Origin: Adineta vaga
Lineage: Eukaryota > Animalia > Rotifera
NCBI GenBank assembly: GCA_021613535.1
Contig: CP075496.1
Location: 3,100,001 to 3,164,000 of the forward strand
DNA length: 64,000 nt
Direction: 5' to 3'
The notes beneath the pieces are model-generated. The model ran no database searches and was not told the DNA's origin. It saw only the letters and a program-made list of their open reading frames with translations. Within the stretch, counting starts at the first letter, position 1, and each line of letters opens with the position of its first letter. A program made the position numbers and the translations under genes. Positions 25,883 through 25,965 of this stretch are shown one piece after another.

Positions 25883-25965
25883 GGGAGCGATGCAGACACC
25901 TCCACGCGGTGCTCCTGGAAAGTTGAATGGGACTAAGTTACCCACTCAGCAACTAATCATCTGTA
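25883..25965 (+). ncRNA. HDV-like self-cleaving ribozyme candidate (copy 2)
   Basis: P1 25883-88/25911-16 with a G1-U wobble; P2 25891-96/25960-65; P3 25898-900/25908-10; L3 TCCACGC; GG 25917-18; P4 within 25921-25954. Confidence 0.78.

What the first reader, a model, noticed from the sequence alone, without database searches (positions are those of the whole stretch)
25883..25965. HDV-like ribozyme begins at nucleotide 1 of the element and overlaps the ORF in frame
Seen: nested double-pseudoknot elements in HDV order: P1 GGGAGC/GCUCCU with the G1-U wobble, P2 UGCAGA/UCUGUA, P3 ACC/GGU, L3 UCCACGC whose CC can pair with J1/4 GG, P4, and a candidate catalytic C in CUAA (25953). The predicted cleavage site coincides with the TSD/element junction. 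The two differences between copies both lie in P4 and keep a stem. An in-frame ATG lies 7 nt from the cut and the whole ribozyme is stop-free. Known: R2 and R4 elements use HDV-like ribozymes to release themselves from the 28S co-transcript. Unusual points are the 6-bp P1, the long J4/2 and essentially no separate 5' UTR, so the RNA may be both catalytic and coding.
Basis: partly seen in the sequence, partly recalled or inferred. Interest (0 to 1): 0.8.

Follow-up and report, generated by a model that had tools for sequence, protein, structure and literature searches.

The report
Self-cutting RNA heading a rotifer jumping gene
The first 83 bases of a mobile element sitting in this rotifer's ribosomal RNA gene fold as a known type of self-cutting RNA (HDV-like ribozyme) that should free the element's RNA from the host transcript; the kind is already known for related elements, and the unusual point is that the protein-coding frame starts inside it.

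Summary
Observation confirmed and interpretation supported, but not new in kind.

- **The element.** Window 25883-25965 (and its twin at 9581-9663) is the 5' end of a 4.03-kb R4-type, restriction-like-endonuclease non-LTR retrotransposon. It is inserted in 28S rDNA between 14-bp target duplications.
- **The fold.** It has every sequence feature of an HDV-like double pseudoknot: P1, P2, P3, P1.1, P4, the L3 motif and a J4/2 cytosine.
- **Comparative support.** Fifteen further junction types at the same 28S position keep the fold with different helix sequences. They comprise a small non-autonomous element of this genome and 14 loci from metagenomes, public assemblies and one GenBank contig. 98.5% of cells are paired against 67% in shuffles, and double compensatory changes occur in P1, P2, P3 and P1.1.
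- **Chance.** A generic descriptor hits only these two places in the 64-kb window and none in random sequence.
- **Rfam.** Models score the window copy only weakly. Several relatives hit HDV-class models at E of about 0.001-0.03, exactly at the junction.
A 6-bp P1 is normal. The 7-nt J4/2 is at the long end of a 4-8 nt range in the family.
- **Coding overlap.** The first in-frame AUG lies inside the ribozyme in all 12 relatives with a long open frame.
- **Prior work.** An R4 HDV-like ribozyme is already published for Ascaris. The scan had already noted the related ribozyme-headed small element about 20 kb upstream.

The parts
25869..25882 (+). 5' copy of the 14-bp target-site duplication (28S sequence); predicted leaving group side of the cut
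   Evidence: Identical to 29913-29926 and to uninterrupted 28S; Rfam LSU alignment stops at 25882
25883..25965 (+). HDV-like ribozyme, whole (83 nt), first nucleotide of the element = G1
   Evidence: Segment parse; descriptor hit; family model hit 42 bits; weak RF00094 alignment in register
25883..25888 (+). P1 5' strand (pairs with 25911-25916; G25883.U25916 wobble at the cut)
   Evidence: 4 of 6 P1 pairs change on both sides among relatives
25891..25896 (+). P2 5' strand (pairs with 25960-25965); contains the in-frame ATG 25890-25892
   Evidence: family P2 covariation
25898..25910 (+). P3 (25898-25900 / 25908-25910) closing L3 25901-25907 (U-C-C-N-C-G-N as in HDV); C25902, C25903 form P1.1
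25911..25918 (+). P1 3' strand (25911-25916) and J1/4 GG (25917-25918, P1.1 partners)
   Evidence: A-U replacement of one P1.1 pair in locus L041
25919..25952 (+). P4 region: hairpin 25922-25926/25946-25950 plus inner stem 25928-25931/25941-25944; carries both differences between the two copies
25953..25959 (+). J4/2, 7 nt; C25953 is the candidate catalytic cytosine (C-U-A-A followed by three extra nucleotides)
   Evidence: Homologous C-N-R-A in 16 of 17 junction types, J4/2 4-8 nt
25960..25965 (+). P2 3' strand
25890..29690 (+). Element ORF from the first AUG after the cut (1266 codons): Myb-like N-terminus, reverse transcriptase, CCHC and restriction-like endonuclease region
   Evidence: RVT_1 1.7e-24; R2 proteins best solved relatives; rotifer and nematode relatives
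25883..29912 (+). Whole R4-type element, intact copy
29913..29926 (+). 3' copy of the target-site duplication
9581..9663 (+). Second copy of the ribozyme, identical except two P4 positions
9581..13613 (+). Second copy of the element; ORF split in three pieces, 42 substitutions and 4 indels relative to the intact copy; 2-bp deletion in its upstream target repeat

Best explanation
Window 25883-25965 is a real member of the HDV-like self-cleaving ribozyme class. It forms the 5' end of an R4-type (R2-superfamily) retrotransposon that has no promoter of its own and is transcribed as part of the 28S precursor.

Inferred mechanism, by analogy with R2 and R4:
1. The nascent RNA folds into the double pseudoknot.
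2. C25953 in J4/2 acts as the general acid/base.
3. The chain is cut between A25882 and G25883.
4. This leaves an element RNA that starts with a 5'-OH at its first nucleotide and is protected by the compact fold.

The same 83 nt are also coding. The first AUG after the cut (25890) sits in J1/2-P2, so translation must start without a cap and essentially without a leader.

Shown here: the fold, its conservation and covariation, its position, and the frame overlap.
Inferred: cleavage, its chemistry, and the use of AUG 25890.
For: **Structure.** All elements are present at the stated coordinates.

**Family conservation.** Seventeen junction types at the same 28S position share the architecture with different helix sequences. 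They are this element, its twin, a 534-bp non-autonomous element of the same genome, and 14 metagenome, assembly and GenBank loci whose proteins are 40-77% identical.
- 268 of 272 cells are paired, against a 67% mean in 5000 shuffles, none of which reached the observed value.
- On model-made alignments, P1 has 4 of 6 pairs and P2 has 6 of 6 pairs with changes on both sides. Covariation scores are 0.345 and 0.418, against 0.12 and 0.10 in shuffles (0 of 500), and all slid registers collapse.
- One P1.1 pair is replaced C-G to A-U in L041.

**Conserved unpaired nucleotides.** L3 is U-C-C-N-C-G, J1/4 is GG, and J4/2 starts C-N-R-A, as in HDV.

**Specificity.** The descriptor hits only the two element starts and none in random sequence. 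The family model finds only 5 places in the 100.8-Mb genome, all at this 28S site.

**Rfam.** Relatives hit HDV-F-prausnitzii and CPEB3 ribozyme models over their full length, exactly at the junction, at E 0.0012-0.034.

**Not a coding constraint.** The ribozyme core is read in different frames, or interrupted by stops, in different lineages.

**Junction variation.** Small alterations occur at the 5' junction: the last flank base is changed in L045 and L046, and copy 1 has a 2-bp deletion. This fits what PMC3774820 describes for ribozymes that cut exactly at the junction.

**Literature.** HDV-like ribozymes at the 5' ends of R2 and of Ascaris R4 are published (PMC3774820; PMC12203849).
Against:
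- The window copy itself scores only 15 bits (E 2.3) on Rfam RF00094 and 10-11 bits on two other HDV-class models, far below threshold.
- The thermodynamic z-score is only -1.1.
- J4/2 has three nucleotides between the C-U-A-A and P2, and a C/A mismatch at the P2-P3 junction. Close relatives (L040, L046) have the canonical 4-nt J4/2, so this copy could be slower.
- My helix parse of the relatives was made by eye and then checked, so the paired fractions lean towards the structure.
- The related sequences share ancestry.
- The family model misplaced the 3' half of the window rows.
Confidence: 0.82

Rival explanations
1. The fold is real and conserved, but in this particular copy it is a poor or dead catalyst because of the lengthened J4/2 and the mismatch next to P3. 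It would then serve mainly as a stable 5' cap substitute or protein and translation platform, or be a relic in an element that no longer moves.
For: - J4/2 is 7 nt here, against 4 nt in the closest relatives L040 and L046.
- Rfam HDV-class models score this copy much lower than relatives.
- There are only two full copies in the genome, one with a broken ORF.
- PMC12203849 and PMC12222951 report that the ribozyme fold also protects R2 RNA from 5' exonucleases.
Against: - Nine of 17 family members have J4/2 longer than 4 nt, including lineages with intact ORFs.
- All positions conserved in the family are intact in the window.
- Copy 2 has an uninterrupted 1279-codon frame.
Confidence: 0.13
2. 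Chance resemblance, or conservation caused only by the overlapping protein-coding frame, with no RNA structure function.
For: The thermodynamic z-score is not significant, there is no Rfam hit at threshold, and the region is inside an open frame.
Against: - Compensatory changes occur in every helix across lineages.
- The core is read in different frames, or contains stops, in L033, L039 and L045.
- The non-coding 534-bp element keeps the fold.
- The descriptor gives 0 hits in random sequence.
Confidence: 0.02
3. The ribozyme cuts as proposed, but the overlap with coding is only apparent. Translation would start at the downstream Met (26073) or at a non-AUG codon, and the ribozyme would be a 5' UTR that merely lacks stops.
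For: - An AUG 7 nt from an uncapped 5' end, buried in P2, is an unfavourable start.
- R2 start codons are generally uncertain (PMC12222951).
- The nematode-like relative L037 starts its ORF about 200 nt after its ribozyme.
Against: - All 12 relatives with a long open frame have their first in-frame AUG inside the ribozyme. In L033, L039 and L045 an in-frame stop lies just upstream of it.
- A motif 3-11 nt after the ribozyme keeps codon phase 0 in 9 lineages and lies upstream of 26073.
Confidence: 0.3

Closest known systems
HDV-like ribozyme of the Ascaris lumbricoides R4 element (Ruminski et al. 2011, as cited and redrawn in PMC3774820)
   Same: It sits at the 5' end of an R4-clade, 28S-specific, RLE-type non-LTR retrotransposon and has the same ribozyme class. 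By my recollection of Burke et al. 1995, it is at the same rDNA site; neither that paper nor Ruminski 2011 is held in the library, so I could not compare sequences.
   Different: - The host is a bdelloid-type rotifer and the protein is only 35-40% identical to nematode relatives.
- The rotifer ribozymes are compact (62-83 nt) with a short J1/2, and the ORF start lies inside them.
- The nematode-like relative L037 has a 234-nt J1/2 and an ORF that starts after the ribozyme.
R2 element ribozymes that cut exactly at the 28S/element junction (Drosophila type; PMC3774820)
   Same: - Co-transcription with 28S and an HDV-like double pseudoknot.
- P1 of 6-7 bp, a variable P4, and a cut at element nucleotide 1.
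- Variable 5' junctions.
- A proposed role in cap-independent translation and 5' end protection (PMC12203849).
   Different: - The insertion site is different, about 40 bp downstream of the R2 site.
- The element clade is different.
- In R2 the ribozyme is treated as 5' UTR, whereas here the first AUG is within it.
Genomic HDV ribozyme and Rfam HDV-class models (RF00094, RF02682, RF00622, RF01787)
   Same: Same topology. L3 reads U-C-C-A-C-G-C against HDV's U-C-C-U-C-G-C, with GG in J1/4, the G.U pair at the cut and C-N-A-A in J4/2 (alignment).
   Different: Scores are far below the gathering thresholds (15.2, 10.8 and 10.2 bits). P1 is 6 bp rather than 7, L3 is 7 nt rather than 8, and there are three extra nucleotides in J4/2.
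SIDE-type non-autonomous R2 derivatives of Drosophila (PMC3414825), and the 534-bp element of this genome noted earlier by the scan
   Same: The small element about 20 kb upstream of the window sits at the same 28S site. It begins with a diverged copy of the same ribozyme: three P1 pairs changed, two of them on both sides, a different P4, and J4/2 C-G-A-A plus 2 nt.
   Different: It is non-coding, whereas the window element is the autonomous partner.

Membership tests
HDV-like self-cleaving ribozymes | Nested double-pseudoknot order P1-P2-P3-L3-P3'-P1'-J1/4(P1.1)-P4-J4/2-P2' | tested here: met
   Segment parse with all pairs standard; descriptor hit at 25883-25965 and 9581-9663 only
HDV-like self-cleaving ribozymes | Helices supported by covariation in homologues | tested here: met
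   P1 has 4 of 6 pairs and P2 has 6 of 6 pairs with double changes. One P3 pair and one P1.1 pair also have double changes. 0 of 500 (tool) and 0 of 5000 (script) shuffles reach the observed values
HDV-like self-cleaving ribozymes | Conserved active-site nucleotides: G.U at the cut, L3 U..C..G, C-C/G-G P1.1, catalytic C followed by purine-rich J4/2 | tested here: met
   G25883.U25916; L3 25901-25907; C25902/3 with G25918/7; C25953-U-A-A. All are conserved in 15-17 of 17 junction types
HDV-like self-cleaving ribozymes | Canonical 4-nt J4/2 directly joined to P2 | tested here: not met
   The window has 7 nt and the family ranges from 4 to 8 nt. This is a deviation from the textbook form, not from the class as surveyed in R2 (PMC3774820 reports wide flexibility)
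HDV-like self-cleaving ribozymes | Site-specific Mg2+-dependent self-scission giving 5'-OH and 2',3'-cyclic phosphate | not testable with these tools
Rfam HDV-class families (RF00094, RF02682, RF00622, RF01787) | Score at or above the curated gathering threshold | tested here: not met
   Window: 15.2, 10.8 and 10.2 bits against thresholds of 50, 44 and 37, and nothing at gathering. Relatives: 24-35 bits, E 0.0012-0.034, also below threshold
R4-clade site-specific non-LTR retrotransposons | Single ORF with reverse transcriptase followed by CCHC and a restriction-like endonuclease; R2-superfamily relationship | tested here: met
   RVT_1 at 1.7e-24. The best solved relatives are R2 proteins. CCHC and PD..D/E-type motifs are visible in the translation. 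The endonuclease region was not examined further
R4-clade site-specific non-LTR retrotransposons | Insertion at the R4 position of 28S with a short target duplication; closest relatives are nematode R4-type elements | tested here: inconclusive
   Insertion after ...CATGA with a 14-bp duplication. Strongylid nematode proteins are 35-40% identical over 98% of the query. L037 has the same site. The published Ascaris R4 sequence and site could not be fetched, so identity of the site rests on my memory of Burke et al. 1995

The most novel reading that the evidence does not exclude
In bdelloid-type rotifer R4 elements the self-cleaving ribozyme is itself the beginning of the coding sequence. The initiator AUG is kept inside the ribozyme, in J1/2-P2 only 7 nt from the 5'-OH end in this copy, and in P4 next to the catalytic C in other lineages. 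One 60-110-nt RNA would then be catalyst, 5' end protector, ribosome entry platform and codons at once, which would make it a natural system for studying leaderless, cap-independent initiation on a pseudoknotted 5' end in an animal.
Probability: 0.45. Interest if true: 0.6.

Novelty: new member of a known kind. Interest (0 to 1): 0.38.

Why it matters
It extends the published link between HDV-like ribozymes and rDNA-specific retrotransposons (R2, nematode R4) to rotifer R4 elements. It also supplies a ready-made comparative set of 17 junction types, with 9 or more unrelated P2 helices, that documents the fold without experiments.

The practical interest is the compactness. These ribozymes are 62-83 nt, cut at element nucleotide 1, and carry the start codon within the fold. 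R2-type systems are being engineered for transgene insertion (PMC12222951, PMC11331408), where ribozyme size and 5' end stability matter. For biology, the conserved AUG-in-ribozyme arrangement gives a direct test of the proposal that HDV-like ribozymes promote translation initiation.

Tried and rejected
1. **Rfam at gathering thresholds.** Only rRNAs were found in the whole window. A 321-nt search with E up to 10 gave no HDV-class hit. Only a 93-nt search gave weak hits.
2. **Thermodynamic folding.** P1 and P4 were recovered, but z = -1.1, which is not informative for a pseudoknot.
3. **RNA evidence.** I did not try another route.
4. **MAFFT alignments of the ribozymes.** A4-A8 put P1 and P2' out of register. 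I therefore parsed the segments by length in a script and used two covariance models built from four well-aligned relatives (A9). These models aligned the 5' half of the window correctly but chose a wrong 3' partner for it. The alternative P2' at 25945-25950 has two mismatches in six pairs and was rejected.
6. **Papers not held.** Ruminski 2011, Eickbush 2010 and Burke 1995 are not in the library. Their content is cited only through PMC3774820 and PMC12203849, or marked as memory.
7. **Unused lookups.** Three encoding-contig lookups gave no DNA for the longest contig because the sample files were too large; for P0019 a second, shorter contig supplied L045. L048 is a 5'-truncated copy outside rDNA, and the upstream element of L041 is a non-rDNA copy with a degenerate L3. 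Neither was used in the counts.
8. **L038.** It carries an unrelated insert at the same site and was not followed.

Full report
**Setting.** The window holds the end of an rDNA array. There are two complete units: 18S at 4426-6238 and 20724-22537, and 28S at 6907-14736 and 23206-31036. Each 28S is about 4 kb too long. The Rfam LSU alignment runs to 25882 and stops.

From 25883 a single long frame runs to 29690. It contains a reverse-transcriptase domain (RVT_1, 1.7e-24). R2 retrotransposon proteins are its best solved relatives.

The insert is bounded by a 14-bp direct repeat of 28S sequence, 25869-25882 and 29913-29926. The genome is 100.8 Mb in 6 contigs, and earlier notes of the scan call it a probable rotifer.

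The protein has graded relatives:
- 48-77% identity to many metagenome and assembly proteins.
- 55-61% to named Rotaria and Adineta proteins.
- 34-40% to a large set of further relatives, among them proteins named from strongylid nematodes (35-38%).

This is an R4-type, RLE-bearing, 28S-specific non-LTR element. That the site is the classical R4 site is my recollection of Burke et al. 1995, which the library does not hold.

**The observation.**
- P1: 25883-25888 with 25911-25916, with G.U at the cut.
- P2: 25891-25896 with 25960-25965.
- P3: 25898-25900 with 25908-25910.
- L3: 25901-25907. Its two cytosines can pair with G25917 and G25918.
- P4: a two-part hairpin.
- J4/2: C25953-U-A-A followed by three more nucleotides.

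The cut predicted by P1 falls exactly at the repeat/element boundary. A second copy at 9581-9663 is identical except for two P4 positions, and each copy keeps a 4-bp inner stem, shifted by one.

A generic compact HDV descriptor finds only these two places in 128 kb of window strands and none in 40 random windows. It was written from the class features, not from this sequence. Folding energy alone says little (z = -1.1).

**Related sequences.** Three sources gave homologous junctions.

1. *The same genome.* Three identical copies of a 534-bp non-coding element sit at the same 28S site, and the scan had already noted them. It starts with a diverged version of the ribozyme:
   - P1 positions 4 and 5 are changed on both sides and position 6 on one side.
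   - P4 is an unrelated hairpin.
   - J4/2 reads C-G-A-A plus two nucleotides.
2. *A metagenome scan.* I searched for the 28S flank followed by anything but the native base. It returned nine loci. Five begin, at the first base after the flank, with an obvious HDV-like fold. A sixth (L037) has the same fold with a 234-nt J1/2.
3. *Contigs encoding the protein relatives.* These added eight more junction types.

In all, 17 junction types were parsed into segments. All have P1 of 5-10 bp (mostly 6-7), a 3-bp P3, P2 of 5-8 bp and J1/4 of GG or GU. In 16 of 17, J4/2 starts C-N-(A/G)-A. In 13 of 17, L3 is the 7-nt form U-(C/A/U)-C-N-C-G-N. In 16 of 17, the P4 segment is predicted to form a hairpin (L044 is not).

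**Covariation.** Across the 17 types, 268 of 272 cells are standard pairs. The mean after shuffling partners among sequences is 67%, and none of 5000 shuffles reached the observed value. P2 alone is 100% against 48%.

The helices are not variants of one sequence: at least nine unrelated P2 helices and about a dozen different P1 helices occur.

On alignments made by two covariance models built from four relatives, the tool counts were as follows.

| Helix | Pairs changed on both sides | Covariation score | Shuffle mean | Shuffles reaching it |
|---|---|---|---|---|
| P1 | 4 of 6 | 0.345 | 0.124 | 0 of 500 |
| P2 | 6 of 6 | 0.418 | 0.098 | 0 of 500 |

The scores are for each alignment's whole counted structure (P1, P3 and P1.1; P2 and P3). 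In both alignments every slid register fell to 17-59% paired.

One P1.1 pair is replaced C-G by A-U in L041.

Caveats:
- These alignments are fitted to the structure.
- The sequences are related by descent.
- My parse was made by eye before being checked.
- The model misaligned the 3' half of the two window rows.

The size of the effect makes these caveats secondary.

**Rfam.** No family reaches threshold on the window. In a 93-nt search the HDV model RF00094 aligns the 5' half in the right register at 15 bits.

Relatives do better, over the full model length and exactly at the junction:
- L036 with RF02682: 34.7 bits, E 0.0018.
- L033 with RF02682: E 0.034.
- L045 with the CPEB3 model: E 0.0089.
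- L049 with the CPEB3 model: E 0.0012.

These independent models therefore recognise the family, though below their curated cut-offs.

A 6-bp P1 is ordinary: PMC3774820 states that R2 P1 stems are typically 6 or 7 bp.

The long J4/2 is a family trait:

| J4/2 length | Junction types |
|---|---|
| 4 nt | 8 |
| 5 nt | 2 |
| 6 nt | 4 |
| 7 nt | 2 (both window copies) |
| 8 nt | 2 |

The closest relatives (L040, L046) have the canonical 4 nt. The window copy therefore carries a lineage-specific lengthening, plus a C/A mismatch next to P3. This might slow it, and it is the main reason for not being more confident about this particular copy.

**Overlap with the ORF.** In the window the frame is open from 49 nt upstream of the cut. 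After the cut the in-frame AUGs are at +8 (25890) and +191 (26073).

In all 12 relatives with a long open frame, the first in-frame AUG lies inside the ribozyme:
- At +7 to +9, at the start of P2, in the window element, L040 and L046.
- At +41 to +55, in P4, in eight others. In L044 and L045 it lies one nucleotide from the catalytic C.
- At +90 in L042, which has a 38-nt insertion in L3.

In L033, L039 and L045 an in-frame stop lies just upstream of that AUG, so initiation cannot be further 5'.

A short motif lies 3-11 nt after the ribozyme. It is a possible 4-bp hairpin with one compensatory change, and it encodes E-A-x-A-R. It keeps codon phase 0 in nine lineages and lies upstream of the window's second Met. 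This argues that 25890 is the start used here.

The ribozyme core is read in different frames in different lineages. Its conservation is therefore at the RNA level, not the protein level. The nematode-like L037 does not overlap: its ribozyme spans 1-302 and its first AUG is at +504.

**Mechanism and status.** By analogy with R2 (PMC3774820, PMC12203849), the element is transcribed as part of the 28S precursor. The ribozyme releases an RNA with a 5'-OH at element nucleotide 1, and the fold then protects the end and may recruit ribosomes.

Small alterations occur at the 5' junction: the last flank base is changed in L045 and L046, and copy 1 has a 2-bp deletion. They fit the variable junctions that PMC3774820 associates with cleavage exactly at the junction.

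The deeper relative L050 builds P1 from 28S bases just downstream of the same cut position. This mirrors the upstream-cleaving R2 types.

**Copies.** The family model finds only five places in the genome: the two R4 copies and three copies of the small element. Copy 2 (25883-29912) has an intact frame. Copy 1 (9581-13613) has its frame in three pieces and differs by 42 substitutions and 4 indels. I describe these breaks only and built no repaired or consensus element.

**Novelty.** HDV-like ribozymes at the 5' ends of R2, R4 (Ascaris), R6 and others are published (Ruminski 2011, via PMC3774820 and PMC12203849). I found no paper in the held library that describes them for rotifer R4.

This is a new member of a known kind. 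The conserved placement of the start codon inside the ribozyme is the one feature I did not find described.

Noticed in passing
window 25838-25847 (and 9536-9545); loci L006-L027: The R2 target site in 28S reads ...CTCTT-CT-GG|TAGCC instead of the near-universal ...CTCTT-AA-GG|TAGCC. All 21 uninserted 28S copies sampled from this genome carry it, as do the metagenome relatives L034 and L046. A changed R2 site in a lineage that carries R4 (and, per the literature, R9) but no reported R2 may deserve a look.
   Followed up: partly
window 25974-25986; homologous positions in L039, L040, L042, L044-L047, L049: A motif 3-11 nt after the ribozyme is conserved. It could form a 4-bp hairpin (G-C-C-G ... 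C-G-G-C), with a compensatory C-G to U-A change in L047 and L049. It always lies in codon phase 0, encoding E-A-x-A-R. Whether it is conserved as RNA or as peptide is undecided.
   Followed up: partly
L042:1226-1336 and L043:100-210: One lineage, found in two samples, carries a 38-nt insertion inside L3, just after the conserved G. The rest of the ribozyme and a 1287-codon frame are intact. Either L3 tolerates a large insertion or this lineage has lost cleavage.
   Followed up: no
L050:15-153: In a 40%-identical relative the P1 5' strand is made of 28S bases (A-U-G-G-A) just downstream of the same cut position, with a 74-nt J1/2 and an apparent 20-bp target duplication. The first pair would be A-U rather than G.U.
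   Followed up: partly
L037:90-391 (RCNH01003240.1): An R4-type element in a genome with the canonical 28S sequence has the ribozyme split by a 234-nt J1/2. Its L3 core matches HDV (U-C-C-U-C-G), and P1 starts with G-C rather than G.U.
   Followed up: partly
L040, L041, L042 (8.5-9.3 kb metagenome contigs): These contigs join two different R4 lineages head to tail through the short shared 28S repeat. This is probably an assembly join rather than real tandem elements. L048 and the upstream element of L041 are copies flanked by AT-rich non-rDNA sequence, one of them 5'-truncated.
   Followed up: no
L038:127-330: A different, G+C-rich repetitive insert with no HDV-like start sits at exactly the same 28S position in another metagenome contig.
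   Followed up: no
window 9567-9580: The upstream target repeat of copy 1 lacks 2 bp relative to copy 2 and to uninserted 28S.
   Followed up: yes
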